A stretch of DNA of 64,000 nucleotides from Guillardia theta CCMP2712. Lineage: Eukaryota > Protista > Cryptophyta. A program made the position numbers and the translations under genes. Position 1 is the first letter of the stretch, and every line of letters starts with the position of its first letter. Below are positions 5,567-38,936 of the stretch, one piece after another. The stretch spans positions 941,631 through 1,005,630 of the forward strand of contig NW_005434670.1 in assembly GCF_000315625.1 (NCBI RefSeq). The letters are read 5' to 3'. The notes under the pieces are model-generated. The model ran no database searches, was not told the DNA's origin, and was given only the letters and a program-made list of their open reading frames with translations.

Positions 5567-8500
5567 TCAAAGGTTGCAAGAATCCGGTAAAATACATATG
5601 TCCTGCGAAAAAGACGGATCACCGACCGGAAAGGCAGGCAGGGAGCAGCGGCAACCATGGGCGGCAGCGGCTCTGTCATCTCGAAGTATCCAAGGCGAGC
5701 CGTCAGCGTGAAGTTGAGGTCAGAGTTCATGTCGAGGATGCGGTCAGCTGGGATCTTGAAGGCGGACGCGATGCCGTAGAGCTGGCAGGCCGTCAGGACC
5801 CCAAGCGCAGCTCAGAAGTCACTCACTGTCTCTTGCCACTGGGGCCGGTACAAGTGCCCAACGTTGGCTGTGCGGGAGATCCCGTTCTCGCCTACCTGCT
5901 GGATCGCACTAGGGTCCCGAACATGAGGGTTTAGGCTCCAGATCTGCCAGAAAAGCATCAGAGAGTGAGGAGGCGATCTTCCAGGAACGAGGAGGAGAGC
6001 ACGAGGGTTGGTTACCTGCAGCCAGTTTGTCTTGAAGCGTGTTGCTATGCTCACGATGGAGTCGCTGGGTTGGAGGTACCAGATGCATCGCTGGACCTGG
6101 ACTTGGATGCAGTGGCTCTGACAGTGCGGCACCGGCATGTGGGAGGTTCCCGGACAAGGGCTTGACTCAACGCAGCTCTGGAGGCATACTTCACCGACCC
6201 ATCCTCCGTGGAAGTAGTTTGGAGTCCACAAGAGGAATCCTTGAGAGTCTGCGATGTTGGACAGCTGTAGGTTGACATCCTTGGTGAAGCTCCCGAGGGT
6301 TTGCATGTCGGCTCCGATGAGAATCAAACCTGTTCGGCTGGTCTTCCAGTTGTGATCACCCAAGATCTCCTCATCGGGAAACAAACTTGTTCCTCTAGCA
6401 GAAGGCCACGTCACTGGAAGGGAGCATGCAAGGGAAGGTACCTGATCTGAGAAATGCTGATGGATGGCACCGGCATGCTCGCATAGAACGGTGGATCGTT
6501 CCTTCGGACCGCGATGGGAACAGAGAGCTGCAAGGCAAACTCACACCAGGAGGAAAGAGAAGTCAACGTCTCTACCTGCTTGCCCATGGTAGCCTGATGG
6601 ATCACTTGTGGGCTTGTAACAGTAGGAGGAAGGGTGTAACGTACGTTCACAAGCACGCACTGCATGGCGCTCCCATAGTCTATCGGGCATCAAGTGGGGG
6701 TCACCTCATGACAAGAGGGCAAACTTGACTTACGGGTCGCCATCACGTTTGCGCAGACAACAGCAGTCTTGTTCTCCCCCACGCAAGGCCGCCAGAAGAT
6801 TTGCTTCGAGAGATTTCCGTACGGCTGCCTCAGGTAGTAGAGAGTAACGGAGAAGTTGGAGACGATGGCAGATATCTAGCACAAACGTGTCAGGGGTCGC
6901 TCAGAGCAGCTCATCTCCCGACTCACTGGTGTATATCCTGAGATGTTATTAGGAGTGATGTCAGTGATGGGCGGGCCCTGGCCCTTCCTGTACATAATGA
7001 ACACTGCGATGCCCGTCTTCGTGAAGTCAGCCTTCAGCAAGCTGTTTTGTTCAAGATGTATCCTTGGCTGAAGTATTGGTCCAGCCTCTGGGTATTGTTG
7101 ACAAGAACAATGTCGGTAATGGCCTGGAACGAGTCAGGGACCGAGTTCGACTCGAAGGTCTCGTAGTCTTGTGTGTGCAGCTTCTCAAAGATTACCGAGA
7201 CGTCCAAACTTCCTTGCACATCTTTCCCTTGTACCCAGTCATAAGTTTCGACCGGGGCTGACGAGATCCAGCCCATGGGGACTGGCTGAGACTGGCTGTG
7301 GTCTATCGCCTGGTAGGAGATGGGGAGGTAAAAGCTAGAGGGACGAGAACCAAAGAACTTGGTCTGATAGAAAACGTCGATGGCCGTGATGTAATCTCCT
7401 TCAGGACTGACAGAGTGCATGCTCAACGAGGGTATGACTGCACGGTCGCTGTGACTTTCAACGAAGTTGTAAGGCTCGTACCCTGTGTTGGTAGACTGCA
7501 ACGTGCTCTGCTGAGATTCCGTAGCGATCATGTACCGCAACGACAGCACCTCCATGTCGTCCGCCTTGTTCTCGTACGAAAACGTCTGGGCATAGCTAGA
7601 AACTGACATGGGGTAAAGAGGAAAGTTCTTCCCTATCGTTAGGTCGAGGGTGCAAAGATTGCCAGGTGCACAAGTGTAGGCCGAGTGCTTGCTGGGCTGC
7701 CTTGAAACGATCACGTCGGGTCCCTTCGCCATGAACATGCTCGTCGCTTCAGTCCAGGAGTTCCCGTAACTCACTCGAAAGGTGACGAAACCGAAGTCGC
7801 CGACCTCAAAGTTCTCAAAGGCAACTAGTGTACACTGAGAGTTGAGATGGTCTTGCCCCAACGAAACCGTTCCAGCGACGCGCGTCTCATTCTCGCTAGA
7901 CACTTGCCAGGTGTAGTTTGCAGGATAATTGTCGTCGGCAGTCCAAAAGATCGTCCCACTGCTTCTTGATACCAAGTTTCCTCGATTCAGACTGCAGACG
8001 GTGAGGGGGCTGGTGTTGCTGACGTTGATGTACAACACGGGAAAGATGACGATGCGAGGTGACCCGATGTAGTCCGAGAGATCGATGCTCGTGCTAACCT
8101 TGTAGCTGCTTGCTGTCCCGTTCTTGCAACAACCCTGCAGAGATGCAACCCATGGCGTCGTCCTACAGGGTTGGCCGACGTAGTGACCAGGGGGGTAGAA
8201 CACGTTGCAAGCTTTGAACTCGCCCGAGTACTTGTGCGAGATCCTCGTGACTCCTAGGAACCAGTCGTTCTCCACGTCCACTGACTCCACTTGTATCGTC
8301 ATCCCGTATTGCGAGGACCCGTCACCTGCCAAAGATTTCAACATCACCAACAATGTGCAGGTTTGCGACAAGTGAACACGACGAACCTGGATCGAAGAGC
8401 GAGGCGATGGCAACACTAGATGCCTGGACATCAGCTGTCGTGCCGGAAAGCAAGACAGCATCTCCAACAGACGGAGAGCTGCATTGGTTGCAGACTGGAT

Positions 8501-8708
8501 CGCAACGGCGACAAGGCCATTCGAAAGAACGTCGCCAAGCGCTCCATATCTCGAAGTCAACTGATGTTGTTCCTTGAGTTTGCCGCCATGAAATGGATGC
8601 TGCTATGAAGTTCCCTGAAGCAGCAACACGCACGTCAATGATGATGAGCAGCAGGCAGGCGAGCGAGCGCGGCAGGAGAAGGAAACGTCGCATCCTCGCT
8701 CCTGGCAT
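5567..8708 (-). CDS. Secreted multidomain protein A: signal peptide, Sib-like N-terminal region, MABP-like beta-prism, two C-terminal LysM domains
   Basis: Signal peptide RRFLLLPRSLACLLLIIIDVRVAA, then NFIAASISWRQ, PG|DG..VESVDVENDWF and PWVASLQGCC. The middle has YITAIDV/AITDIVL/PPITDI repeats. LysM1 is CIWYLQPSDSIVSIATRFKTNWLQ|IWSLNP; LysM2 ends DICILPDSCNL*. It is colinear with the paralog at 35967-38936. Confidence 0.8.
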
Positions 8709-9417: not shown

Positions 9418-11628
9418 ATGAGGCTCTCACATTCTGTCTACTGGCTGAAACGGCCTCGTTACAGAGGAACGATTCTCAATGGTTGACATATGTCGATTTA
9501 TTTGATGATATTCAGATAGAGAAACGTGGAAACTGATGATGTTTTACAGGTGAGACAAGCCAGAAGAAGAAGAGCAAGTCAGAGAAGAAGAACACAGAGG
9601 TGTTCTTCGACCAGAAGCACCTCTTGTGGTTCGGGGGAATCTGCGTTTTCCTTCTTCTCATTCGGGTGGGATATGATGATGGCAAGGGAAAGGCGAAGCA
9701 GGACGACCTCTTGGATGGCCAGGATCTCTATGAGGTGTTAGAGATCAAGAAGACTTCCTCCGACAAGGATGTGAAGAAAGCCTACCACAAACTCGCCATG
9801 AAATGGCACCCGGACAAGAATCCCAATTGCGAGGAATGCCAGCTGAAGTTCCAGAGAGTCGCTAGAGCGTATGAAGTTCTCTCGGACCCCATGAAGAGGA
9901 AGATCTATGACAAGGAGCAGAAGCTGATGGAATCTGCGATCAAGTCGAACACCGTCTCGATCACAACCTCAAACTATCACGAGCTGGTGAAGTCAGGGGA
10001 CATCTGGCTTATCCAAGTCTATGTGGATTGGAATGAATTCTGCCAGCATTATGCGCCTGTGTGGGAGGAAGTTGCTTCTCGTCTCGACGGCGTGATCTCG
10101 GTAGGACGAGTGAACCTGGGCCGAGACAAGGGGCTGGGGTCAAGGCTGATGGGCAGCAAGGACACTGTCCCATCCATCGCGATCTGGGACGGAGCGACTG
10201 AAGTTCGACGAGTGAGGTTTCAGTTCCATGACGTCTCGGTCGATGGTCTTATCAAGTTTGTGGCGCAAGCGATGAGAGAGCGGTTTAAGGTGAAGGAGTT
10301 GAAGGATGCTAGGGACCTCAAGACGTTTGTGAGCGACAACAGGAACAAGGTTCGTGCGGTGTTTGTCGGCAAGGCAGGCAGCCTGGAGCAGGTTTCGTTC
10401 ATTGCTGCAGCCTCAAAGTTTCATCCTCACCTCGCATTGGCGATCACTTCCAAATTGTCTGTGGGGCAATCGGCCTGGGAAGGTATCAAGCCCCCTGCTG
10501 TTCTCTTATTCCGGGGCGACGAGGTCTCGGACGAGCCAGCGATGATCTCAGGCAGACTGTCAAAGAAAGAGATGATGAAGAAGCTGAACGACAGTCGCTA
10601 TCTCTTCTGCCCCAGACTGATTGCCGGCAACTTCCACAATGTGTGCGAGAGCTCCTGGTGTGCTGTGAAGGTGATTGGAGATGGCGAGAAGCCGTTCGCC
10701 TCTGCAAGGGTCCTAGTGAAGGTGAAGAATGCCGTGAAGCCTGCAGGATTGAACGTCTCTGTTGCTGCGATCGAGTCTTCCCTGCAGTCCCCCGTCCTGT
10801 CTTCGTTTGGAAAAGTCAAAAAGGGCGACGTCCTCTTGCTCCACAGAGAAGGCGACGGCGCTGTTGAGTCCGGGGAGAAGAAAATTCGTTACTGGATCTT
10901 GGAGAAGGCCAGTTCTGAGGATGAAACATCTTTGACCAGCCTGATCAAGCAAATTGCGACAAAGGGAGAAGGTTCAAACGTGGTCGAGGGACATGTAGAC
11001 GGAGGCGAGAATGCCCTCACCTCCAAGTTGGTTCCCGATCGTGTGTCTTTCACTCAGGTTCGTTTTGTAGTGGCTGATAGACCACATAGCATGGTCACGT
11101 TGCTTTCAGGTCGTCTTTGATTTCGTGGACAACCTCTCGGTGGAGAAGCAGATCATCTTATACACTGTCCTCTTGGTGTGCATTTTTTCTTGTTCACCCC
11201 TGGCTGATCTTGTGCTTCTTAGAGTATTGGGGTGCTGTTCTCCTTCTACGTCGGCAAGCCCATCCTTCAGGCGACAACTTTAGCGTTGGATCAGAAGTAT
11301 CTTCAGCAGGTGAAACCACTTGTTTCATCTCTTCCTCTTCATTGCACCTAGCTCAATGTTGGACAGTTTTCTTCCTCAATTCTTGTCTCACTTTCATCAA
11401 TTCGGTCAAAAGTTCCAGTGCCCACTCTTATCATTTACACAGGACAACCAAGAAGACCTTGACGGGTCTGATAGTGGTAAGGAGGCGTCGCCAAGGCACC
11501 ACTCGGATGTGAGACAAGCTTTATGGAATATCGTGATCATTGCAGCTTGACATGCCATGCAGAGCGAGGAAGAGGACGATCAAGATGACGAAGACGAAGA
11601 TGTCGTGCTTGTCAAGAAAAGAAAATAG
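9418..11628 (+). CDS. DnaJ + thioredoxin-fold membrane protein (DNAJC16/ERdj8-like)
   Basis: J-domain [31 protein letters not shown], followed by thioredoxin-like [24 protein letters not shown]. Hydrophobic segments lie near the N-terminus and after the Trx domains, and there is an acidic tail ending at TAG 11626-11628. The start exon is inferred from a phase-1 intron. Confidence 0.85.
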
Positions 11629-13234: not shown

Positions 13235-14648
13235 GGTCGCCTTCTCAAGAGACACAGTAACGGAATGTCCTGAATGTAACGGAAAATAACCTAAACTGTA
13301 ACGTACAAGAGAACTCCTCGAGGTAAAGGAGTTTCAGACAGCGCGTGCAAAGTTGCTGATCGCTTAATATACTTATAATTTATACATATATATAAACGTC
13401 CCATAATGTTGAACCGATGGGTTTGACAGATTCAGAGGTGCAAATACACTATGGCCACAAATGGGTAGGGTTCTTTATGTCGGCACCCCCTGGGATAGAC
13501 TCTAATGGGGGTGTGGCTCTGACATTGAGGGGCAAGAGAAAGATCCTCCATCTATGGACCCCCTTTCAATGATTGTTTCATGCAGTGGGCAGGCGGAAGA
13601 GTGGCTGGTTTCGAGGAGGGTGGGGTCTGTTTCCATGCATCTCGATTTGAACGGCCGAGTGAGCTCTTTCAATCATACCTCAAGGTAAGAAATCTTCCAA
13701 TTGATCTACTATCAAATATACAACATCATCGCTACCCTGCTCTCACACAGGACATCCGACTCTGACTCCTAGTGCCTGTGTGGTCCGTTTGCTGACCATT
13801 TCTTTTTTTGCACTGCTCACCCAAGGTGGACATGTCGCAAATATCCGGGGTTCGTGCTGGGCATACCCTGAAGAATTCGAATTTTATAGGAACGTCTATA
13901 AGTAAAAAGGCACTAGAAGCTCTCTGACCTCCCTGAATCAGTACCTCACTCCCAACTGCATCGAATCTCGCATCACCCTACCCCCACAATATCCTGCTTA
14001 CGTCGTGCTTTACTCTGCTGACAATCATTTGTAGGAAAATGTAAATCTCAAGAAGCCTCTTTTCGTTTATTTGGTTTCTAAAAATGAAACCAATAATATA
14101 CTTTTAATACAAACAACGTACCGCTCTTCGTTCATGCGTCCTCCCCTTCCGTTCCCAAACGCCATTGCTGTAGCAATGCTCTCCTTCCCGCCTGCCTTCC
14201 TGCCTGATCCACTCAACCCCTTCATGCTTGCTCCGTGTTCGCTTCCTTCTCAACTTACCCTCACTGTTTTTTATATCACCCCTCTTTTGCTAACGACCGC
14301 TCCTGAAACATTGACGACGGTAGATGGTTGCGAGCACTTGCCTTTGATCTTCTCACTGCTCTAGCTTGATGCTCTCAATTTCTGGCGGGATAATGAGGTT
14401 CCCGAGAAGTGACTCCACCATTGTAATCATTTGAGCGATGCATTTTACACGATGTTGATTAGAGTGAGGAAGTTGCCCACAATGTCGGATTGTGAAAATT
14501 TTCCCTGCAAAGCAATTTTCCCTGCTGCTTTGCAGGGAAAATCCTTCACTTCATCTCCCCATGCTGAGGAAAGTCTGACATCTTGTCTTTTCAGCTTTAG
14601 GTTATATTGGTTATTCTTGTCTCACAAACGGTGAGGCTTGTAGATGTT

Positions 14649-16370
14649 ATGAGGTACAAACTTTCATATTCACAGTCTATGCAACAAGCGAAGGAGAAGG
14701 CAGGCTCGGCAGCAAAGGACTTCATACGCGCTTCCTCTGCGGCTGTTTCCGCCATCTTGAAGCGCAGAGAAGACTCGGACTGCACAGGAGAGGGTGTCTG
14801 CCATGAGGTTTCGCAAGAGGAGAGGAGGTCGCAGGATGAAACGGAGAGGCGTCATTCGGACACGAATAGCTGCCAGGGCAGAATCTCATGCGAGTCGAGA
14901 GAGGAAGAGATGATCTCTGCAAAGGCAGGAGAGCAGCCCATGTTGTCCCGCAGGAAACTCCCTGCGGTGAGGATCAGGGCAGCGATCAACTACATGATAT
15001 CTCTCACTCAGAGTGGTATTCACAAGGATTACATCCTGCAGGCAAGCGAGTATGGGCGGGGGCACTATGGGGTGGTGAGAAAGGCGACGGATCGATGGAC
15101 GGGAGAGGAGGTGGCAGTGAAGGTGATCTCCAAGGTGGGAGACAACGGGGGACTGGAGACTCACCTGATTCAGCGGGAGATCGATATCATGAAAGACGTA
15201 GATCACCCCAACGTCGTGAGGATGTTCGCGTGCTACGAGTCCAGGAGCCACTTCCACATCGTCATGGAGCCGGTGACAGGAGGGCAGCTGCTGGACCGCA
15301 TCGTGGCGAAGGAGCACTACTCGGAGACAGAGGCAGCCGACTGCTTCCTGCAGATTATCAGCGCGGTCAAGTACCTTCATCAGATCGGCATCGTTCACAG
15401 GGACCTCAAGCCGGAGAACGTCCTGTACGCCAGCCCGGACCCGGACTCTCCTCTCAAGATCTGTGACTTCGGGCTCAGCCTCAAGTCCGACATCGAAGAG
15501 CTCGAGGCCGGACGGGCCCGGATGTGGAGCAAGTGCGGGTCGCCGGACTACGTAGCTCCGGAGGTGCTGGGCCGCTCAGGGTACGGGAAGGAGTGCGACG
15601 TGTGGAGCTGCGGGTGCATCCTGTACGTGCTGCTGTGCGGGTTCGCTCCCTTCGGGCAGGACACGCTGAGGAAGAAGTTCAGCTCGATCTGCCGTGGGAA
15701 GTTCAACTTCCCCAGCCCCTACTGGGACCATGTGTCCGATGACGCCAAGGTGAGGAGGGTTGAGGAGGGAAGGAGACTTTGACGGAGAGATGAAGTGGAG
15801 CGTGGGGGGAGGGGGAGGGGGAGGGGAGGACGACGGNNNNNNNNNNNNNNNNNNNNNNNNNNNNNNNNNNNNNNNNNNNNNNNNNNNNNNNNNNNNNNNN
15901 NNNNNNNNNNNNNNNNNNNNNNNNNNNNNNNNNNNNTCCTCCTCCCTCCTCCCCTCCTCCCTCCTCCCTCCTCCTCCTCCCCTCCCTCCCTCCTCCCCTC
16001 CCCCTCCCTCCCTCCTCCCCTCGCCCCTCCCTCCCTCCTCCTCCCTCTCCCCTCCTCCGCTCCCGTCCCCCTGCCCTCGCCTTCCTTCCCTCTCTGTCGA
16101 CTTCTCCTCTCTCCATCTGTGTCCCGCCTCTTCTATATTGCAAGTCCGGCACCCTCTGCCTCTACTTCATCATCCCAGCCGTACGCGCTCCCGCTCTCTC
16201 TGACTCTTTCACAGCTCGCCGATCAAACAGGGAAGGGAGCCATCGGCTTCAAAGATTTCACTCGCCTCCTCTACGTCAGGACCAGGTCGTTCGTCCCTCG
16301 TGTCAGTGACGTCGACTTACCCTCCAGCAGGAAGTGCTCTGATTGCAACACAACAGTCCTTCGCCAATGA
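14649..16370 (+). CDS. CAMK-group Ser/Thr kinase (CaMK1/CDPK-like), interrupted by an assembly gap
   Basis: Kinase motifs GRGHYGVV, VAVK, HRDLKPEN, ICDFG, CGSPDYVAPE, DVWSCG and FPSPYWDHVSDDAK. After the gap there is an EF-hand-like DQTGKGAIGFKDF. Start and end are approximate. Confidence 0.9.
15837..15936. other. Assembly gap (100 N)
   Basis: Run of N flanked by low-complexity G/A and C/T tracts. Confidence 1.
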
Positions 16371-16499: not shown

Positions 16500-17570
16500 T
16501 CAGCTGTCTAGCGAGCACACAAGCAACCGCTCTACCCTCATGCTCCTCAGCTTGCAAAGATCTTCCAGCGTCAGCCACAAGTTCGGAACCACCCTGATCA
16601 ATCTGTACGCGTCGTCGTAGGACAGAGCAAGGAGGAGAGAGTCTTCCGATGCCTGAACGTCTGCTCCCCTCTTGCCCTCTGATAGCGCTCGTTCCTTGGA
16701 CAGGCCCTGCTTCAGCAGCCGGCAGATCTTCATGACAGACATCTCCCCGAAGCACTCCCCCTTCTCCAGCTTGTCGATGATCACCCCGTCCAGCATACAG
16801 ATGCAGCTCCCTGATGCAACCCAGAACATGTGAGTTCCTATCGAATCCTTCTTCGCAATAATCTCGTCCTTCTTGGCCACGCTCACCGTCATCCGGTCAG
16901 CAATCTCTCGCAGGCAGTTCATGTCCACCCTCCGAGCACGGATCGTGCTGCTCTGCAGCAAAGCAGCGACTCGTCCATCGATGTCGAGGGGAGAGTTCTT
17001 CACCGCCTCGATCCTCAACTCCAGCAGCCTCGTTCTCTTCATCCTCTCGCTGTTGACCCTGATGCAATCCTCCAACGAGAACCAGAGGTTTGGTACCATC
17101 CTCATCAACGGCAGGACGACCTTGTAAGACAGCTCAAGCAAGGTGCAAGTTTCCATGGCAACAATGTCGGCTGATCTCCGGCATTCCTGCAGTGCTGTCT
17201 TAATGTCGACTCCATCTCTGACCAGCTTGCAGAGCTTCACGACGAGCATCTCCCCAAAGCATCTTCCAGGCTGAAGAAAGTCTATGACCTTGTTGTCCAG
17301 GATACACTCACAGCACCCGGACACCAGCCAGAACATGTGGGTCCCATGGCATCCCTTCCTCGCTATGAAATCTCCCCTCTCCACAATGCGCACAGACATC
17401 TTCTGTGCAACGAACTGGAGGCAGGTTGCATCCACTGCCCTTGCTCGTATGATGGGCGAATTCATCAGGATCTGCATCTTTTCATGGAGATCGATGCTCC
17501 CCCTCCTGCTACACCTCGGCGATTCCTCCTCTTCATTACACTGCTTTTGATGTGCCTCCACCATACTCAT
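16500..17570 (-). CDS. Intronless protein with two tandem cyclic-nucleotide-binding (cNMP/Crp-fold) domains
   Basis: Two internal repeats each carry I..KG/D..GTHMFW..SG.C.C.LD..VID.L..G.CFGEM...R.AD..A.E...LL.LSY. There is an N-terminal RRGS motif. Confidence 0.85.
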   Translation of the reverse strand: MSMVEAHQKQCNEEEESPRCSRRGSIDLHEKMQILMNSPIIRARAVDATCLQFVAQKMSVRIVERGDFIARKGCHGTHMFWLVSGCCECILDNKVIDFLQPGRCFGEMLVVKLCKLVRDGVDIKTALQECRRSADIVAMETCTLLELSYKVVLPLMRMVPNLWFSLEDCIRVNSERMKRTRLLELRIEAVKNSPLDIDGRVAALLQSSTIRARRVDMNCLREIADRMTVSVAKKDEIIAKKDSIGTHMFWVASGSCICMLDGVIIDKLEKGECFGEMSVMKICRLLKQGLSKERALSEGKRGADVQASEDSLLLALSYDDAYRLIRVVPNLWLTLEDLCKLRSMRVERLLVCSLDS

Positions 17571-28300: not shown

Positions 28301-31300
28301 ACAGGCCTGTACGCTGACGTTGTCTTTCATCCAGTCGAGGCTGAGAACAGCTTCGTCCGCCCTCGATGAGTCCTGGCAGCTGCCCAGGTAGATGTGCGAA
28401 GGCTCGTTCAGTTTCAGCAGCTCTACCAGCAGCCTTGCTTCCTCGTTCCTCAGCCCGTCAAGGTTTCTCTGCAGCATCTCGAGCTGTTTGACGTTGGCCG
28501 CGTAAGTCTCTTCCAGCTCAGCGATCCTCTCACCGATCTGATCTGTCTTGCGCAACTTGAACGCCTCCAGCGCCTCCACTTGCTCGTCGAATCGTTTCCT
28601 CCGAGACATTGACACCTCACACCTGTGAACACAGATGTTGAGCTCTCCCTGAATCTTGTCCGTTTCTTTGGCGAGTTTCTTGGCTTCATCCGCCAACCCT
28701 CGAGCTTGGTTGATGTCGTCAGTCCCGATGCACTGACTCAATAGTCAGACACCATCTTCCGCATCGCCTTCACTTACCTTGAGACACTGAAACAACTGCA
28801 GCAAGAGGCGAGCGTCGACTTTACCGACAAGTTCTTCAGCCTTGAATTGAGCTAGCCTGTCAATGCACTCCAGCTTTCTGATCAAGAATTCATCGAGCTC
28901 CGCCTTCCACGCGCCTCTCACTGAAGCTTCGGGGAAACTTCTCGAGAAGTTCTCTTGGATGTGATACTTGATGTCTTCCAGCGACTCCGCGGCGTATTCA
29001 AGAGCCTCCTGCACCAACAGGATCGACTGCTCCCTCAGCTTAGGTCGGTTCGCGTACGCGTTCCTCAGAGGGGGCCGGTCGGTGAGCAGGGCATACTTCC
29101 TGAGCTGCTTGAGGTTAGACGACTTGGCGTGAGGTTGACAGCAAGTCTGGATGAGAGTAGCGAGCAAGACGCCGTCTGCAAAGTCCCAGTGAATGCAATC
29201 AAAGTCCAGCGAAAGCTTGAAGATCTCTTCTGCCCAGCGCTTGAAAGCCACGTGACCGTGGGTGTCGAAGATGTCGATCAACCCACTCGCAGTCCCCACC
29301 GCCAAGTGATTGCCGTCTGGAGAGTAGCGAACGCAAGTGAGAGATGTGAATCTTTGCAGGAAGTCGATCTGGTGGATGGGCTTCAGATCAGCATCGAGTA
29401 TCATACACCTCTTGTTGGCTGCTACTGCAATGTGACTGCCGTTGGGCGATATGTCAGCAGAGGTCACCGACGAGTGGAGGTGACAAAAGTCGACGCAGGT
29501 CAAACGTTGACTGTCCCACTTCTGTATGAACCCATGGTATGTCGCTGTGAGGAACCAGGGAGACGTCGGGTTGCAGCAGACGTTCACCACGTGCTGACGA
29601 GGCACTCCCTCGCAGACCTTGTAGCCCAGCTGGAACCGATCCCACGAGCTCATGACGAAGAGAGAGCCGCAGCTAGGCTGGATCAAGACGCTCTGGTCGA
29701 AGAAGTCAAACGAGCACCCGACGGCAGCATGCTTCTCTTCCGACGGTTGAGGGTCACCCAACGAGACCGAAAGACTCGCAACCTGCTCGATGAAAATGTT
29801 CGGCTCCTCGCTCAAGTGAACCTGCCGTCCGTCGCACACGAAGTAGAAGGTTTTAGACTTGATTGCTGGAGGCTTTCCATATGCGGATGTAGGAAATTGC
29901 AACTTGTGTCTGAGAGTATCCAGAGAGTCTTCGCCAGCCATTGCCACAACGTCCAAAGTGACAACATCGGAAACGATCGGAACGAAATATCGCATGACTT
30001 TCTTCGTCTGGAAATTCCAAATCTTTGACAAGCCGCTGCCCTCACAAGTCAGAATGCAAGAGTCTTGATCAAAGGTATTGTGGACGATGATTCTCGAGAT
30101 GCTGCAATGATGCATGTGATACACTCTCATCAATCGACCGAACTCAAACTCGTAGATGTTCCCTAGTTCACATCCGAACACCACTCGCTGGTAACCGACG
30201 TATGCAGCAGCGGTCATGGAGGGGACGGAAAGGTGGTCCGCTGCTTCCCCGGCCCTCACTGAGAAGTTCCATGACAAGTCTCCGCCCGTCCGCGTCATCT
30301 TGACAAAGTCTGGAAGTCCAATGCCGAAAGTGACGAACTCAGGTGACGAGACTCGTGCGAAGGGATCAAAAACCAAGTGATCGAGGAACTCAGTGAAGGT
30401 GAACCTTCCTATCACTGCCTCGCGCTCATAACTGAGAATGAAGACGAAGCTCTTCTTGCCGCGACCCAGCAAAGCTACATCACAACTCTTCGGAAGGAAC
30501 TGGATCTCCTGTATCTTGACCTGAAACAAGGAATCAATCGCAACCCTTTTGTGCACTTCCAGGCTTATGACGTCCCAGATGATTATGGTTCTTTTGGTAC
30601 GAACGCTCAAAGTGCACACTCTCTGTCTTTGGACATCCAGGTCAACCGATACAATCTCGTCGTTACCGTGTTCGAGAAAGTGTCGCTGACTGTTGTTCCT
30701 CTTGTCAGACAGAACTGCAGTCGACCGATGGATCGAGAGGTATTCCCCAGTGCACACCACAAAAATATTTGTTGAATGATGACTGCGCCTCCCATGCAAT
30801 GAGTGGACGCGGAGAGATTGGCCTCGATAGACGAACATCTCAGAGTCCAACTCGTCTTCACGGAAAGCTTCAAAGTCGTCGACCTTGAGTCGCTGCTTGT
30901 CGTAGCTGACGGTAGTTTGCTTCTCCTCCTTGTGGGAACTAGCAGGCAACTCTGATATCTTGCGGTGGCTCTGGATGGTCTTCTGCACAAGCTTCCATTG
31001 TACAACACTCCCTTCCCCGTGAGAGCAAGTCAAGAGATGGTTGCCGACGAACGAGAGAGCGCTGACTTGAGCTGTGTGACATGTGTACTTCATGCTGTGA
31101 GGATCACGAGACGTGCAAGGGAACCTACAAACAATTACGTCTGATCCAGAGCTGTAGCTCAGAGTGTCTTTGAAGAGCATACTTCTGTCTACTTGCAATG
31201 TTGTCCTGTCGTTTGACGTATCTTCATCGTTGACAATCTCCAGAACAGATTGCTCCATCGTACAAGAGTGCGAGGCCCACTTGACATCTAGAGGGATTTC

Positions 31301-34300
31301 TCCTCCTCTCCGACTTGTGCAGGAAACAGGTGAGTGGTTGTTGTAATGTATTCCCCAGAACAAGAGCTCTTTGCTCGCAGAGTTTGCCCTGACATAATTC
31401 GAGTCGAGCGACCAGTCCAAGTACAAGATGGATGCTGTCGATCCTGACATTTTCATGAACTTTTCAGCAAGATTGTGAGACCTGCGAATATGGACAAAGT
31501 GATCTCCAGTCGACAATGCCAAGAGCTGGTCGTTTGGAGCAAATTTCACACCGATCACGCTCTTGCCACATTTCAAAGCTGCTGAGAGGATTTGGAAAGT
31601 CAGTTTCCCTCCTTTCAAGAGCTTCTGAGAAAATTCAGCCTCCAGATCTACCTCGACCATTTTAGATTCCATCTTGAAATTGACATGAGTGATTTGGCGA
31701 CTCTCAATTTTCTTGGACAGCTGCTTCTCAAATAGTAGTTCTTTCTTCTGACCTTCCGAAATCAGACCATTCTTCTTCAGGATGTCCATTTCCGCAATGA
31801 ACAATCGTCTTCGCTTTATGGACGACTTGTTGTCATTGTGTAAAATCCCCTTTCGAATTCTCTTCGTCCTGTGTGTATGGAGCTCAGCTTCAAGGTCCAA
31901 GATTTCATGTTGTAGTTTTTCCTGCTGCAACACAATTGTTTTATCAGCAACCTTTCGATCTTTACGAGTCCGTTTCTCATGGTCTAAGAGCTTTTTGAGT
32001 TCAATCTGTCTGGAATTGATGTCATTCAGCAACTTCTTCTCATATTCTGTCCAAGTAACTCCCTCTAGAGACAGTCGCATCCCTCCGTTAAATATTGAGG
32101 TGATCGAAACGTCATTTTCTGAAGTGACATGTTGAATGTCAGTAAATGTTTCGACGTCGATAACGACAATGTTTCCATCCTTCAAGCCTATCACACAACT
32201 GAGCCCATCGTACGAGAAGCACATGCTCAAGATCGACGATTTGTACTTATTTCTTCTCATGCACTTTCTGTCTGCAAGATTCCACAGCGCAGCGACTCCG
32301 TCATCAGAGCCACTGACAAACTTGGTGTCATCCATTGGAGAAATGCTCAATGCTAGGACGCTTTCCTTTGAAGGTGAGTCCATCACCAAGATCAGCTCCC
32401 TTGTTCTATCTCGACACCTGTAAAGAATGTTTTGGTCCGTTCCAATCAGAACCGTACTTGCAACCTTGTCAGACTGATTCCTGGTTTGGTCCATGAAATG
32501 AAATCCAGTAGACTTCATGACTCCTGGAAAGTTTGAGATCGCAACTCCATATTGCTTCACTTGAGACTGATACAGACGAGGTATGTTTTGCTCATGGACT
32601 TTGGTAACAGAGAAGGATACTCCTTTGCCCTCTACTTCATGTCGTTTCCACATGCTGAAAACAATCGAACCGTCTGATCCTGAAGACATCAGGTAATGCA
32701 CGTCCGACATCGCACTATCCCAAGTCAGAGACATATCAATAACACTATCCTTATGCATTGCACAGATATCCACTATTTGACATCCTTTCCAAACGTATAT
32801 ATTCCCGTCCTCCATTCCTGTCAAAAATTCATCTACCCCACAAACAGCCACACAGAAAATAGTCTGCATTTTGATCTGACCATCCAATGGAAAATCATCA
32901 TTCCACTTCCAATAGCTCTTTCCATTAACTACTTCTGAATATCTTTGCGTACAAACCAAAGTGTTTTTCTTGTAACATTCATCAATGTGAAATGCACGAG
33001 CGCTGGCATCTCGAAGCTTCATCCGAATGGTTTCTTGCTGATGAATGTCTTCATAGCTATGCAGGATTCGATGAATCGCATTCATGGACCACCGAAAATA
33101 CGGATTTTGACTGAAACCTCTTCTTGGAAACGATTTCTCTTGGAGTTTGCGTTTGAATTGATCACAAAGGAATGAAAAGGCTTGTTCCAAACTTTTGAAT
33201 GTATCCAACGTTTTCTGCCACTGTAGCAGATCAGCATGAATGACAAAGTCTTTGATGTAAGAAGTCACTTTCAAGGCCAGAATGTAGGCTTGCACTGCAG
33301 AACGGAAATCATTGCCTTGGCTTGCGTCATCAGCCAAAGTAACAAGATCGCACAATAGTTCATATGCGGGCTGAATATCAACGTCTGTGTACTCATACTC
33401 TTTGACTGAATGAACATGTCGAAGAATTTCCAACTCCAAGTCAATGACTTCCATGAACAGGTCGCTATCTGCTGTACAAAAATTGGTCCACTGTTCAAGT
33501 CTGTTATGCCCACAGACAAAGATCAAGTCTTCATGTGGATGCACCGCTATTGAACTGATCTTGTTGACACCCAAGCACGCAAAGGTTTTCAGACCAATCG
33601 GTTCCTGCTCAAGATCAAATATGACTAGGTATTGAAACCCTGCTATCAAAAACACAGCGATCATGTCAAGTCCATTCCTTCCGAATTCCAGGGCGAGAAC
33701 AACAACTGGTTGCCCTGCATCTATTTTCCGGTCGATAGGGCTCCATTCTTTTACACGTATGAAGCGACGTGAGTATTGGTCATCATGAAGCAAGGTCCAG
33801 ATGATGATGGAAGGCTTCTCGTCATCTACGTTCAGCTCATGCCCCGTTGCGATGATATTTCCAGAAGGATGCAACGCAGCACAGGTAATTCTCTGATTTG
33901 TTTCCTGCAGAACCAACTGGCGATTTGTAATGTAATCAAGGACGACTCCTGTCGCACCGACAAAATAGAACACACAATTTTCCTTTGACAAGATGAAAAT
34001 TCGGCATGAAAACTTACTTCCGCCGAAGCCATACACGTGCTCCATCTCCAACTCTCGACGCACACTGAGGTCTTGCGCTTCACCTTCCAGCTCCATGTCG
34101 GTCTGGCTGATGTTTTTGCGCCAGGGCTCGAGGATCTCAAAGGTGTCAGACGCAGAGTCATGAGCTGAAGGCTCTTCCTCCCCCGGACGCTGGTGTGCCA
34201 CAAGAGTTTGATGCATTCTTCGTAGATGAGGATGGGCGTCTTCACGACGTCTCGACTCCTCTCCTCGACAAGAACACTTCCACAGGTTCATGAATACCCG

Positions 34301-35227
34301 AAGGATGAAATGTTTCAAGCTGTGCTCTTTCTCTTGTAGGTTGCTGTGGACAGAATGCAAGAAGTTGAGGTCATCTTTGTTCTTCCGATATTCTTCCTTC
34401 AGTTTCCTGGGTGCAAACAGCAATGTCACACAGAGGGCAAAGCTGCGAAAGCAAATCAAAACCTGAGCTCGTCAGCCTTCTGATAGAATTCGAGCTGTTT
34501 GCTGTTGTGGAGAGAGAGCTCCAGGTCTTGATGGTTGTACGCGTCACGCAGCTCTGAAGTAGCTCTTTCGCGCTTGCTCGTGTAGTCCTGCAGGAAATGC
34601 GCATGATCTTGCGAAGAATCGTGAAGCTTCTTCTTCCACCATTGGATGGATGCTTTCGTCTTCCAGTTGAACCCGGAGACTGTTGCATGTCCTGCCGAGG
34701 AGGAGGAGAAATCGTAGTCCTCATGAAGCGATGTCAGCTGGTCAATGCTATAAGTCTTTTCTTTGATCTCCTTGGTTAGCCTTAAGATGCAGACCCTACA
34801 CTTGTCATCTATCAGCTGCTGGATGCCTTGGCGATTTCGTATAACTTCGACAATAGATCCTAACAACGCATTCCTGTCTTTGTCGCTTGCAATTTCTTCA
34901 ACATTCGGTACGTAACGCACTTGAGAAGCAGACGTGATTTCTTTGAGTTCTTGCTCTCTGTCATGTAGATTTGACGTAGGTATCACCTCTCTTGCTGTGT
35001 GAGGAAGTTCGAGCTCCAGGATCTGTTCTTGGCTCCTCTTCAGTTTGACAACATCGTCGGAGAGGTACCATGACAGTGTCGTCAAGTTGCACAGTTCTGA
35101 TATTGTGGAGTTTGACATGTCAGAGTGAAGCAAGTTTGGATCTTTTAGGTGTGAGTGACAGGTTCCTAGTACATTCACCTTCTCCTCACCTTCCCGCCAC
35201 CTTCATCCCTCGATTATGCGAAACCAT
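25378..35227 (-). CDS. Giant EML-like WD40 protein (HELP-like motif, multiple beta-propellers, coiled coils) with C-terminal tandem SAP-like motifs
   Basis: ORFs 34456-35178, 28745-34459, 27356-28741 and 26431-27327 are joined by short GT-AG introns (ELR|KLKEE, CLK|CIG, EIK|QML). EML hallmarks: LEMEHVYGF..YFVGATGVV, LDWSLDSNYVRANS..ELLFW, KWASHSCT, RFPC and Q.HFLEH..EI. Stop at 25378; the start is approximate. Confidence 0.8.
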
Positions 35228-35966: not shown

Positions 35967-38936
35967 ATGGCGATTGTAGTGCTAACGGCGGTCCTTTCCC
36001 TGATTGCGGCGTATGCAAACGCTCAGCAGACATGCCCGGGGGTGGAAGCGATTTACACTGGAAGTCCTGTCGGAGCTTTTATTTCAGCATCGATCTCGTG
36101 GAAGCAGTTGTATGGCAATACGGTGTCCTTTGAGATTCAAGGGATGTGGAGACGAAAGCATCAGTGGCCTTGCTCCTTGAAGACAGGTTTCAGCGGTCCA
36201 GACGGATATCCTGGACTGGGGGACCAACTTAAAGTGATGGGGTTGTCGGCTATCGATGACACCTCACCGGATCCAAGGATCATCACACCTGGCAAGATTG
36301 GAGCTTTCTTCAGCACAGGTACGCCACTATCGTCCTGTCTTTGGTCACTGACTGTTGCGATGCAGGAGATGGGAAGGATTATGAACTGCCGTTGAAGGTT
36401 GTCTCCTATTCTATTGAAGAAGACTGGATTTCCACCATTTCTGTTTTGGTGCACACTTATCCCGCTCCTTTCCAAACATTGCAAGAGATTTACCCTGCAA
36501 GTTATGTTGCGGTTTCAGGCCAACAAGACTTGACTCAGCCATATACAATCATTCCATGGAGAGCCACTCTTTCAGGATGCTGTCGTAGGTGGGCTGCTCA
36601 GACTACAAGCTTGAACTTTGCTGTTGGAGCAGAGGTAGATCTGAGTAATCAAATTTCTTCAGCCAGAATTGTCAGCATGCCTTACTGGACTATCACCCCG
36701 ACCAAGAGGACGATCTCGGTCTGTGCTTTGTCTTTGACGGGGCAAATGGGTATGTTCCAGAAGAATGGAGGTACTTTGAACTGGCCTTTGGATGATAACA
36801 TACCAGCGAGCTTTGAGTGGAGTATTCTGGGTTCGAGCCTTCCAGCCAAAATTGTGAGCGGGGCACAAACATCATGTGTAGTGATCGAGGTTGATCCTTT
36901 GGGAGTCAGTGCAGGAGAATTCATCCGCCTGCGGAATAAATTAGGCAATGCAGTATCGGAAGCTGAAATGGCAATAGCGGTAAAGGCGAACACTGAAGTT
37001 CCGGCAACGCCAGTCGCGACATCCACGAATCCTGTTCTTGACACAAGGATGTCCTGTCCTGCAAGTTCAAGTTGCATGAAGATTCTCAGCCTTGGCAAGT
37101 ACTACGCCTGGTCTAAGATGAAATGGACAGCAGGAACTTGGACAAGCCCGCTCGAACTGAGGTATACAGTAGCTACTGCCTCCTCTCAAAGCCCTCTGGT
37201 TTCGACGTCGCAGTCTAGTGTTGTCTACAGCACCACCAAGGCCGGCGAGGACCATGCCTACCTCCCGCGGGGTTCCTGGCTGTCGCCTTACAACGATGCA
37301 GGGGAGTACGTGACAGACTTAGCGGTGACGTACACCTCTTCGACTACCAATGCGGACCCTTCTGCAGACCTTCCTATCTCTTATGGACAACGAGACTACT
37401 ACGACCAGGGAAATCCTCTCCCAAACGTCTGGAATTCTGTTCCAAACAGCAATTTCAATGACGGGTTTGGTGGAGCACACGTCAACCTGTTTATCCAGAG
37501 AATGACGTCTCAGGCTGCAGCAGGGATCGTAGACCCTAAAATCATGGCAGCTATAACTTCAATCAAGCTCGCCAACGAATCTCAAGTAGCCGACTACTTG
37601 TACGAAGGATACATCAAGCTTGAGAGAAATCTGCTGCAGCAGAGCAACCGGGGGAGCATCTTCATCATGTACAAAAAGGGGTCTGGTCCTCCTGTCCTAG
37701 ATATCTCGACATCGCCGGTCGTTGGGTACGTGAATGTGAACGCTTCGACGACAGTGGACGGAAGAAATCAAACAACAATCAACCTGTATGTAAAGTATAG
37801 TGACGACAAAAGCATCCAGAGGGCACTTATGTGGAGACCATGCACTTCGCAAAACGAGCCCGTCGTGATCTGTATCGCGACAGTTATCTCTGCAACAGGA
37901 TTCGGAGATCAGCAATTCTGTGTTTATCTTGATGTCGTTCCCCTTCGAGCTCCAGCCATCACTCCAAACCTACCAGGGCCATATTCAGCTATCATGGGCG
38001 ACCTGACAGAAATCACCTTGGCCATCGTTCGCAGGGATGAACCTATCTCCGGCCTCGACCAGGACCCAATTATCCAGTTCAGCTCAACGCATGGTTCGTT
38101 GCCTGAATTCAGGATGCAAGAAGCTCTCACCAGCGCCACCCCCGCTGTTCTACAACTTGTAATTATCATCTCAGTGACGTGTCGAAAAGTTCTGATGCCA
38201 TCGCATTGCAGGTGGGTGCGGATAAGAAGACCCCGGGCCTTTCTCAAGTGCTCGGCAGTGGCGACAGCGTTGTGTACGACTCGTATGTCTCCTACTTCCA
38301 GTGGATCCCCTCGCCCTATCAAGGGGGTTGGAAGGGTTCGATCTGTGTGGAAGTGTGTCTCGAAGCCGGAAGCTGCCCGGCGACCCCCAACGTCTTCAGT
38401 CCCGTCTGCTCGACATTCTGCCTGGACATACTCGTGGAGAGATGTAAATGGGCACTGCAGTCGGAGGATTCCTTCGCCGAGATCGCTCCTCGCTTCCGGA
38501 CCAACTGGCTGCAGGTCCTTCTGCCTCTTCGTACCCCGCGTTCCTCTGACTCGCAGCAGCTCTGGTACCTCAACCCCTTCTTCCAGCACCCCGACTACAG
38601 CGGAGTTTCGACACAAGCAGGGGCCGTGAAGGTGATCAACGTTGGTAGAGTGTACAGGGTGCAGATGGGAGATACGGTATGGTGTCTTGTCGCCTTCTCC
38701 TCGTTGCTCCGCTGACTCCACACCTCGCAGGTCAATTCCATCCTCGAGCGCTTCGGCGCTTCGCTGCAGAGCTTGATAAACTTGAATGCTGACGTCACCA
38801 ACTCATCCATCCTTGCCAAGAAGGGAGAGTTGGCGCTGCAGGTGAAGCAAGAGCGCCAGCCCTCTTGTCTTGCCCGCTGACTTTGTTGAAGGAGTTGTGT
38901 ATCATCCCTGATTCTTGCGCCGTGCTGGCGAGCTAG
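35967..38936 (+). CDS. Secreted multidomain protein B: signal peptide, Sib-like N-terminal region, MABP-like beta-prism, two C-terminal LysM domains
   Basis: Signal peptide MAIVVLTAVLSLIAAYANA, then AFISASISWKQ, TG|DG..VVSYSIEEDW and PWRATLSGCCR. The middle has YVTDLAV/AITSIKL/PPVLDI repeats. LysM1 is CKWALQSEDSFAEIAPRFRTNWLQ|LWYLNP; LysM2 is YRVQMGDT|VNSILERFGASLQSLINLN...ELCIIPDSC. Confidence 0.85.

What the first reader, a model, noticed from the sequence alone, without database searches (positions are those of the whole stretch)
5567..8708. Diverged paralog (copy A) of the LysM protein, about 27 kb away on the opposite strand
It has the same domain order and conserved blocks as copy B: SISW, WRR..WPC, GCC, LPISY, FIMY.KG.GPP, W.PC, W.P....GGW.G..C...C.E...CP, RC.W.LQ..DS...IA.RF.TNWLQ and terminal CI.PDSC. 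Introns fall at matching positions (G|DG, NWLQ|, and before the last CI.PDSC exon). Strong divergence with both frames intact implies an old duplication kept under selection, so this is a gene family rather than a one-off fusion.
Basis: seen in the sequence. Interest (0 to 1): 0.75.

Follow-up and report, generated by a model that had tools for sequence, protein, structure and literature searches.

The report
Diverged secreted LysM protein paralog
This is a real, expressed and spliced gene of the alga Guillardia theta: a fast-evolving member of a small family, so far named only from cryptophytes, of secreted sugar-binding (LysM) surface-type proteins, which the reference annotation breaks into two fragments because the assembly is one base short.

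Summary
Window 5567-8708 (minus strand) is a nine-exon gene. A 903-aa transcript ORF from public data (P0002) matches its exons residue for residue.

It aligns with copy B's lineage over its whole length: 30% identity, residues 32-903, E 2e-113. It shares four intron positions with copy B, all in the same phase.

The architecture tested here is:
- signal peptide
- Sib-N-type domain
- two Ig-like domains
- MABP beta-prism
- Cys-rich beta-sandwich
- two LysM domains

"Gene family from an old duplication" is supported. G. theta has six full-length paralogs, four of them within 106 kb. Hanusia phi has separate orthologs of A (69% identity) and B (81%). Named relatives are all cryptophytes.

Three corrections:
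- The assembly has four A at 7045-7048 where the mRNA needs five, so the genomic frame is not intact. The reference annotation holds only 234-aa and 133-aa fragments.
- Copy A has eight introns, not three, and four are not seen in the other paralogs.
- dN/dS between A and B cannot be estimated, because synonymous sites are saturated.

Function (binding of microbial or surface glycans) is inferred, not shown. The scan already followed up copy B (s1-437013); this agrees and adds to it. Interest is moderate.

The parts
5567..8708 (-). Whole coding region of copy A (903 codons plus stop), nine exons
   Evidence: P0002 maps residue for residue onto the window. All eight junctions are GT-AG and reproduce the protein exactly.
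8387..8708 (-). Exon 1: signal peptide (about residues 1-30) and the start of the Sib-N-type domain. Intron 1 is 8326-8386 (61 nt, phase 1, at G|DG) and is shared with copy B.
   Evidence: The only hydrophobic stretch of the protein is residues 8-36.
6927..8325 (-). Exon 2: rest of the Sib-N-type domain (to about 8003), two Ig-like domains (8002-7403) and the first part of the MABP beta-prism
7045..7048 (-). A-run where genome and mRNA differ by one base: four A in the assembly, five needed by the mRNA. The reference model P0006 ends here.
   Evidence: Genome sequence. The frame changes between residues 534 and 535. Four transcript ORFs read NKNSLL, while the annotated P0006 ends NKTAC. This is the only copy of the stretch in the genome.
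6801..7402 (-). MABP-type beta-prism, residues 416-599. It spans the A-run and intron 2 (6876-6926, 51 nt).
   Evidence: VIA-align matches: 8b6v Z 12.7, 2qp2 Z 11.7, 3tow (MVB12B MABP) Z 10.5 with 130 of 152 residues aligned. Ig-like background is Z 8.3 or less.
6442..6875 (-). Exons 3-5 (6875-6734, 6679-6576, 6527-6442). Introns 3-5 are 54, 48 and 47 nt in phases 1, 0 and 2. Together with intron 2 these are the four introns that were not seen in the other G. theta paralogs.
   Evidence: The other paralogs give continuous HSPs across most of these positions.
6085..6635 (-). Cys-rich beta-sandwich, residues 637-788, with the W.PC and GGW..C...C motifs
   Evidence: Generic beta-sandwich matches with Z about 7. 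The 788 end was set from the whole-protein model; the higher-confidence P0007 model puts the first strand of LysM1 at 789-791. This module recurs in more than 20 other loci of the genome.
5857..6084 (-). LysM 1, residues about 789-840, split by intron 6 (5944-6015, 72 nt, phase 0, after NWLQ; shared with copy B)
   Evidence: Pfam LysM 37.8 bits against a cut-off of 20.9. Beta-alpha-alpha-beta unit in the pLDDT 86 model.
5567..5856 (-). LysM 2 and the C-terminal CILPDSC, residues 841-903, then the stop codon TGA at 5569-5567. Introns 7 (5782-5826, 45 nt) and 8 (5603-5655, 53 nt) are both phase 0 and shared with copy B.
   Evidence: Foldseek top matches are tandem LysM proteins: 4uz2, 4s3k, 5jce, 4b8v.
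35967..38936 (+). Copy B, the paralog compared. Six exons: 35967-36318, 36366-38134, 38212-38514, 38560-38676, 38731-38841, 38892-38936.
   Evidence: Junctions were chosen by GT-AG, open frame and similarity to the Hanusia ortholog P0003.

Best explanation
Copy A is a functional nuclear gene of Guillardia theta CCMP2712. It is one of six paralogs of a family named so far only from cryptophytes. It arose by an old duplication, before the Guillardia-Hanusia split, and has since diverged faster than its neighbours.

The product is a 903-aa secreted, probably N-glycosylated, disulphide-rich protein with no membrane anchor. Its order of parts is: signal peptide, Sib-N-type domain, two Ig-like domains, MABP beta-prism, Cys-rich beta-sandwich, two LysM domains.

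Shown here: the gene model, its expression and splicing, the domain folds, the paralogy and the family's spread.

Inferred: the LysM pair holds a GlcNAc-containing glycan such as bacterial peptidoglycan or a chitin-like polymer. The beta-prism and the N-terminal adhesion-type domains contact a membrane or another surface. The protein would then act as an extracellular bridge or recognition molecule. I put about 0.4 on this function.

The frameshift in the reference sequence is most likely an assembly error, not a broken gene.
For: Gene model and expression
- P0002 matches the window's exons exactly, and all eight junctions are GT-AG.
- Four transcript ORFs exist, including two that retain an intron.
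- The organism is fixed by cluster members GUITHDRAFT_150174 / XP_005841165.1.

Domains
- Pfam LysM: E 1.8e-9, two stretches.
- The C-terminal model has pLDDT 86 and two LysM folds; the best PDB matches are all tandem LysM proteins.
- MABP beta-prism: Z 10.5-12.7.
- The N-terminal region aligns with the N-terminal domains of proteins that pass the SIBA-E_N cut-off: hhalign probability 100, E 5.9e-42, 183 columns.
- Only one hydrophobic stretch (the N-terminus), 11 NxS/T sequons, 24 Cys.

Family and history
- Six paralogs.
- A+Hanusia-A and B+Hanusia-B each have 100/100 support. The A stem is 2.28 changes per site. The path since the split is 0.42 for A against 0.23 for B.
- 17 of 17 Cys are conserved, and LysM1 is 85% identical to the Hanusia ortholog.
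Against: - The genome as assembled carries a frameshift at 7045-7048. No transcript nucleotides or raw reads could be read here to settle which sequence is right.
- No ligand, localisation or expression level is known.
- LysM2 shows pN about equal to pS between A and B (28 codons only), and carries QET where canonical LysM domains have GDT.
- The direct Pfam SIBA-E_N score is below the cut-off (18.3 against 28.1 bits).
- No chitin synthase was found in the genome by six-frame search, so a self-made chitin ligand is unsupported. One of the two searches had a control that could not ring.
Confidence: 0.8

Rival explanations
1. Copy A is a pseudogene. The one-base loss in exon 2 is real, and the gene is decaying after duplication, which would also explain its long branch.
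For: The assembly reads through to a TGA right after ILNKTAC. The reference annotation stops there (P0006). A is the most diverged C4 paralog, with a stem of 2.28.
Against: Four transcript-derived ORFs are otherwise 99-100% identical to the locus and are open across the site. The locus is single-copy, so they must come from it. The long branch predates the Guillardia-Hanusia split, and since then the two orthologs keep 69% identity, 17 of 17 Cys and an 85% identical LysM1. There are no other stops or shifts in 903 codons.
Confidence: 0.04
2. The protein is real and secreted but works on the alga's own surface, as a structural or self-adhesion component (cell covering, cell-cell or gamete contact), not in recognising microbes.
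For: Sib-N and Ig-like domains are typical of adhesion molecules; Sib proteins mediate substrate adhesion in Dictyostelium (PMC3279395, PMC9197732). The genome has at least five more genes that pair a cut-off-passing SIBA-E_N domain with the same Cys-rich LysM module about 1-3 kb downstream. That looks like a general surface-protein toolkit.
Against: LysM ligands are GlcNAc polymers, and no chitin synthase was detected in the genome (weak negative). The fast evolution of A relative to B fits an outward-facing role somewhat better. Neither point is decisive.
Confidence: 0.3
3. The beta-prism marks a membrane-attacking role, as in MACPF toxins. The protein would be a targeting subunit of a lytic system.
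For: The best structural matches of residues 416-599 are the C-terminal beta-prisms of the pore formers Mpf2Ba1 (8b6v) and Plu-MACPF (2qp2). MABP domains were proposed to bind membranes (PMC2881412).
Against: No MACPF or other pore-forming domain appears in Pfam scans of 24 family members or in the fold search. The same fold occurs in the non-lytic MVB12B at similar Z.
Confidence: 0.03

Closest known systems
Copy B of the same window (35967-38936) and its Hanusia phi ortholog A0A7S0EE67 (P0012/P0003), named only 'LysM domain-containing protein'
   Same: Same domain order end to end, 30% identity over residues 32-903, and four introns at the same position and phase.
   Different: A has four extra introns and lacks B's LQL|VG intron. 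A's branch is far longer. Since the split from Hanusia, A has diverged about 1.7-1.8 times as much as B. In the tree B groups with the C4 paralogs at 875 kb and 939 kb (95/96), while A's place is unresolved.
Dictyostelium Sib A-E adhesion proteins (Pfam SIBA-E_N, PF24907)
   Same: The N-terminal domain is homologous by profile-profile comparison with cut-off-passing SIBA-E_N domains. The motifs EDW..G....H.Y, PW.A..GCC and DLS....SPR are shared.
   Different: No VWA domain in Pfam scans, no transmembrane helix and so no cytosolic tail. The direct Pfam score is below the cut-off. This is not a Sib protein; only the first domain is shared.
MABP beta-prism of MVB12B (3tow) and the C-terminal beta-prisms of Plu-MACPF (2qp2) and Mpf2Ba1 (8b6v)
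   Same: Same fold, with Z 10.5-12.7 and 126-130 residues aligned.
   Different: 14-18% identity and no Pfam sequence match. Here the domain is extracellular and embedded between Ig-like domains, not in an ESCRT subunit or a pore former.
Tandem-LysM glycan binders: T. thermophilus NlpC/P60 LysM pair (4uz2), SleL (4s3k), rice CEBiP (5jce), Ecp6 (4b8v)
   Same: Two beta-alpha-alpha-beta LysM units in tandem, with Pfam LysM above the cut-off.
   Different: LysM1 has SDS and LysM2 has QET where the usual motif is GDT. LysM1 carries a long loop. The pair ends in a Cys-containing CILPDSC tail. The partner domains are different.

Membership tests
LysM (PF01476) | Score above Pfam's gathering cut-off | tested here: met
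   37.8 bits against 20.9, E 1.8e-9, two stretches at max_evalue 1; one stretch passed at 0.01.
LysM (PF01476) | Beta-alpha-alpha-beta fold | tested here: met
   The model of the last 133 residues has pLDDT 86.3 and two such units. The best PDB matches are all LysM proteins, and a single Volvox LysM domain gives target-normalised TM 0.77 at rmsd 2.4.
LysM (PF01476) | Binding of GlcNAc-containing glycans | not testable with these tools
   Needs a binding assay.
SIBA-E_N (PF24907) | Score above Pfam's gathering cut-off | tested here: not met
   18.3 bits against 28.1 for P0002. 7 of 24 family members hit weakly, best E 1.2e-4.
SIBA-E_N (PF24907) | Homology to domains that do pass the cut-off | tested here: met
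   hhalign of the family's N-terminal region against the N-terminal regions of P0051, P0058, P0065 and others (33.6-47.9 bits; P0049, also in the template, scores 27.3, just under the cut-off): probability 100, E 5.9e-42, 183 columns.
Sib adhesion receptors (Dictyostelium SibA-E) | VWA domain, transmembrane helix and cytosolic tail | tested here: not met
   No VWA hit. No hydrophobic stretch apart from the signal peptide.
MABP beta-prism | Beta-prism fold matching a solved MABP domain | tested here: met
   3tow Z 10.5, rmsd 3.6, 130 of 152 residues aligned; 8b6v Z 12.7; 2qp2 Z 11.7. Background is Z 8.3 or less. The model in this part has moderate confidence: most blocks are at pLDDT 70-86, with low loops.
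MABP beta-prism | Sequence-profile match | tested here: inconclusive
   No Pfam family was reported for residues 416-599 apart from a chance-level DUF7795 hit. The ESM Atlas gave no usable hit.
Cryptophyte Sib-N / MABP / double-LysM family (copy B's family) | Full-length collinear similarity to other members | tested here: met
   E 2e-113 over residues 32-903. All six G. theta loci match across the large exon.
Cryptophyte Sib-N / MABP / double-LysM family (copy B's family) | Shared gene structure | tested here: met
   Four introns share position and phase with copy B.

The most novel reading that the evidence does not exclude
The Sib-N / beta-prism / LysM genes are a cryptophyte-specific repertoire of secreted receptors for bacteria or prey. 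Copy A would be its rapidly diversifying arm, with a changed ligand specificity fixed before Guillardia and Hanusia split. It would be a lineage-specific pattern-recognition system built from an amoeba-type adhesion domain, a membrane-binding beta-prism and LysM.
Probability: 0.15. Interest if true: 0.6.

Novelty: new variant of a known kind. Interest (0 to 1): 0.35.

Why it matters
Practical value: the reference annotation of G. theta has no full-length model of this gene. It holds only a 234-aa fragment that ends at the one-base discrepancy and a 133-aa LysM fragment. The nine-exon model given here repairs the annotation and flags a probable assembly error.

Biological value: the work shows that a domain combination not found in the literature searched (Sib-N, MABP beta-prism, double LysM) is a multi-copy, clustered family named so far only from cryptophytes, with unequal rates among paralogs. 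If the LysM pair binds bacterial wall material, these genes are candidates for how cryptophyte algae sense or hold bacteria. That bears on mixotrophy and on alga-bacterium associations. The function is not yet tested, and the parts are all known domain types, so the surprise to a specialist is moderate.

Tried and rejected
Only pN 0.47 and dN 0.75 can be stated.
- PDB sequence search with P0002: no match at E up to 1.
- Foldseek with the whole 903-residue model: only generic strings of Ig-like domains such as titin and alpha-2-macroglobulin, which is uninformative.
- ESM Atlas on residues 455-575 and 30-212: nothing usable.
- Literature: no paper links G. theta or MABP with LysM proteins of this kind.
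- A second genomic copy that could explain the mRNA/genome difference: none.
- Chitin synthase families in the genome: no hits. The control for PF01644 could not ring, so this is a weak negative.
Copy A was handled through the database ORF P0002, and copy B exon by exon by reference. A joined copy B protein was therefore not aligned, folded or searched.
- Expression comparison of A and B: not possible with these tools.
Full report
**What is there**

The window is eukaryotic nuclear DNA. Cluster members of the gene's product carry the names GUITHDRAFT_150174 / XP_005841165.1, which fixes the organism as Guillardia theta CCMP2712. The genome is 87.1 Mb in 669 contigs, and the window is contig C4:941631-1005630.

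A search with the large exon found a Hanusia phi protein with 66% identity (P0001). A search with that protein found P0002, a 903-aa MMETSP transcript ORF marked complete.

**Gene model of copy A**

P0002 maps onto the window by exact matches only. All eight junctions are GT-AG and reproduce the protein exactly.

| Exon | Window coordinates (minus strand) |
|---|---|
| 1 | 8708-8387 |
| 2 | 8325-6927 |
| 3 | 6875-6734 |
| 4 | 6679-6576 |
| 5 | 6527-6442 |
| 6 | 6394-6016 |
| 7 | 5943-5827 |
| 8 | 5781-5656 |
| 9 | 5602-5567 (includes the TGA stop) |

- Intron lengths in order: 61, 51, 54, 48, 47, 72, 45 and 53 nt.
- Intron phases in order: 1, 0, 1, 0, 2, 0, 0, 0.
- The finding's coordinates are exactly the start and stop codons.

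**One-base discrepancy**

Between residues 534 and 535 the exact match changes frame, with one base counted twice.

- The genome reads TTG AAC AAA ACA GCT TGC TGA.
- The protein reads L N K N S L L K, which needs five A where the assembly has four (7045-7048).
- Three MMETSP ORFs and one JGI/IMG ORF all read through this site. The annotated model P0006 (234 aa) ends ...ILNKTAC at exactly this point, and the other annotated model, P0007 (133 aa), covers only the C-terminus.
- The stretch is single-copy in the genome.

The simplest reading is an error in the assembly. So "both frames intact" is true of the mRNA but not of the reference DNA.

**Isoforms**

- P0008 retains the last intron.
- P0009 retains intron 7 and ends ETVSDF.
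- The Hanusia fragment P0001 ends in a similar way after ETV. It also carries a 20-residue insert, starting with V and ending with Q, exactly where G. theta has intron 2. This looks like intron retention there too, which is an inference.

**Comparison with copy B**

Copy B's model was derived exon by exon with the Hanusia ortholog P0003 as a guide.

- Exons: 35967-36318, 36366-38134, 38212-38514, 38560-38676, 38731-38841, 38892-38936.
- Intron phases: 1, 0, 0, 0, 0.

Four introns coincide with copy A in position and phase:
- inside the G codon of G|DG (phase 1)
- after NWLQ (phase 0)
- after (E/D)T in LysM2 (phase 0)
- two residues before CI.PDSC (phase 0)

Copy A has four more introns, after residues 574, 621, 656 and 684. 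Copy B has one of its own, at LQL|VG.

The other G. theta paralogs give continuous matches across most of the A-specific positions. The two C160 copies also lack intron 1.

BLASTP of P0002 against P0003 gives one alignment from residue 32 to 903: 30% identity, E 2e-113. The similarity is therefore not confined to LysM.

I did not build a joined copy B protein.

**The family**

The genome holds six loci with the full architecture:

| Locus | Strand | Note |
|---|---|---|
| C4:874.4-876.9 kb | + | |
| C4:938.8-941.2 kb | + | ends 430 nt before the window starts |
| C4:947.2-950.3 kb | - | copy A |
| C4:977.7-980.3 kb | + | copy B |
| C160:110.8-113.4 kb | + | inverted pair |
| C160:114.8-117.4 kb | - | inverted pair |

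- The C160 pair is about 98.8% identical in DNA.
- The C160 pair has 6 synonymous and 6 non-synonymous codon differences in 571 codons.
- All six loci have an open large exon.

An exhaustive HMMER search of 1.84 billion representatives with P0001 found only 10 proteins at E 1e-30 or better. About 100 further proteins match only the C-terminal Cys-rich plus LysM part.

Named members come from Hanusia, Geminigera, Teleaulax, Rhodomonas and Hemiselmis, which are all cryptophytes. One partial sequence is filed under an archaeal MAG.

**Age and rate**

Results of the maximum-likelihood tree (20 rows, 702 columns):

- A pairs with Hanusia P0001 and B pairs with Hanusia P0003, each with 100/100 support. 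The duplication therefore predates that split.
- B groups with the C4 copies at 875 kb and 939 kb (95/96).
- A sits on a stem of 2.28 changes per site, and its place is unresolved.
- A single clade of all C4 copies is not rejected (AU p = 0.27). A local origin is possible but not shown.
- Since the split, the A pair has a path of 0.42 against 0.23 for the B pair.
- Identity to the Hanusia ortholog is 68.8% for A and 81.1% for B.

Signs of constraint in A:
- All 17 aligned Cys are conserved.
- LysM1 is the best-kept part, at 85% identity.

Between A and B, synonymous sites are saturated (pS 0.81) and pN is 0.47. No ratio can be given.

**Domains**

- Pfam finds LysM above the cut-off in P0002 and a weak SIBA-E_N hit of 18.3 bits.
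- The AlphaFold2 model made with a 24-sequence alignment has pLDDT 64.9 and pTM 0.64. It is almost all beta.
- Whole-model Foldseek gave only generic Ig strings.
- VIA-align against 48,161 chains put residues 416-599 on the beta-prisms of Mpf2Ba1 (Z 12.7), Plu-MACPF (Z 11.7) and the MABP domain of MVB12B (Z 10.5, 130 of 152 residues aligned). These are clearly above the Ig-like background of Z 8.3 or less. Residues 637-788 matched only common beta-sandwiches.
- MABP domains were defined in MVB12, Crag and bacterial pore formers and were proposed to contact membranes (PMC2881412).
- The last 133 residues (P0007), folded with 33 sequences, gave pLDDT 86.3 and two beta-alpha-alpha-beta units. The best PDB matches were all tandem-LysM proteins.

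For the N-terminus:
- Proteins that share only A's C-terminal module often carry a SIBA-E_N domain above the cut-off, up to 47.9 bits.
- hhalign of the family's residues 30-215 against their N-terminal regions gave probability 100, E 5.9e-42, over 183 columns.
- The first domain is therefore a diverged Sib-N domain.
- The protein lacks the VWA domain, transmembrane helix and tail of Sib receptors, so it is not a Sib protein.

In G. theta itself, eight loci pass the SIBA-E_N cut-off. Five of them lie about 1-3 kb upstream of a Cys-rich LysM module on the same strand. The wider superfamily therefore has at least 11 genes here.

**How it probably works**

Shown:
- A signal peptide is the only hydrophobic stretch.
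- There are 11 N-glycosylation sequons and 24 Cys.
- The domain string is as above.

Inferred: the protein is a secreted protein in which the LysM pair binds a GlcNAc polymer and the beta-prism and adhesion-type domains bind a membrane or surface. My estimates:

| Reading | Estimate |
|---|---|
| Outward-facing role (bacteria or prey) | about 0.4 |
| Self-surface role | about 0.3 |
| Undecided | the rest |

No chitin synthase was found by six-frame search. This is a weak negative.

**Verdict**

The earlier follow-up of copy B (s1-437013) reached the same architecture. I re-tested each domain on copy A rather than taking it over. The result is solid but only moderately surprising.

Noticed in passing
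window 7045-7048: The reference assembly has AAAA where four transcript ORFs require AAAAA. The NCBI models for this gene are two fragments, P0006 (234 aa) and GUITHDRAFT_150174 (133 aa). This is probably an assembly error that splits the gene.
   Followed up: partly
L005:1381-2961 and L006:1276-3171 (G000:C160:110.8-117.4 kb): Two further family members form an inverted pair, about 98.8% identical in DNA. They have 6 synonymous and 6 non-synonymous codon differences in 571 codons and indels in a purine-rich intron. Both lack intron 1.
   Followed up: partly
L002:1437-4265 (G000:C4:938.8-941.2 kb): Another full-length paralog ends about 430 nt before the window starts. Four family members therefore lie within 106 kb of contig C4.
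   Followed up: partly
G000 C36:305.2-308.8 kb, C119:34.3-37.7 kb and 60.8-64.2 kb, C5:20.6-22.2 kb, C11:311.0-313.8 kb: Five other loci pair a SIBA-E_N domain above the Pfam cut-off with the same Cys-rich LysM module about 1-3 kb downstream on the same strand. This is a sister subfamily. Relatives elsewhere carry Laminin_G_3 or Folate_rec domains in the middle.
   Followed up: partly
P0171 (MGB1594515.1), member of the P0032 cluster: A 688-aa partial member of this otherwise cryptophyte family is deposited as a protein of a Promethearchaeia (Asgard) MAG. It is most likely a eukaryotic contig binned by mistake.
   Followed up: no
P0001 (Hanusia phi), at the place of window intron 2 (6876-6926): The Hanusia transcript has an in-frame 20-residue insert that starts with V and ends with Q, exactly where G. 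theta has a 51-nt intron. It ends after ETV, like the G. theta isoform that retains intron 7. Both look like retained introns, possibly a conserved truncated isoform without LysM2.
   Followed up: no
window 28745-34459 (-), 16500-17570 (-), 14607-15782 (+), 9600-11120 (+): Long open frames of neighbouring genes: a 1904-aa ORF whose sequence looks like WD-repeat/EML-type proteins, a tandem cNMP-binding protein, a CaM-kinase-like kinase and a DnaJ plus thioredoxin-like protein. These were read by eye only. Three runs of N (300 in all) mark assembly gaps near 15.8, 52.3 and 55.1 kb.
   Followed up: no
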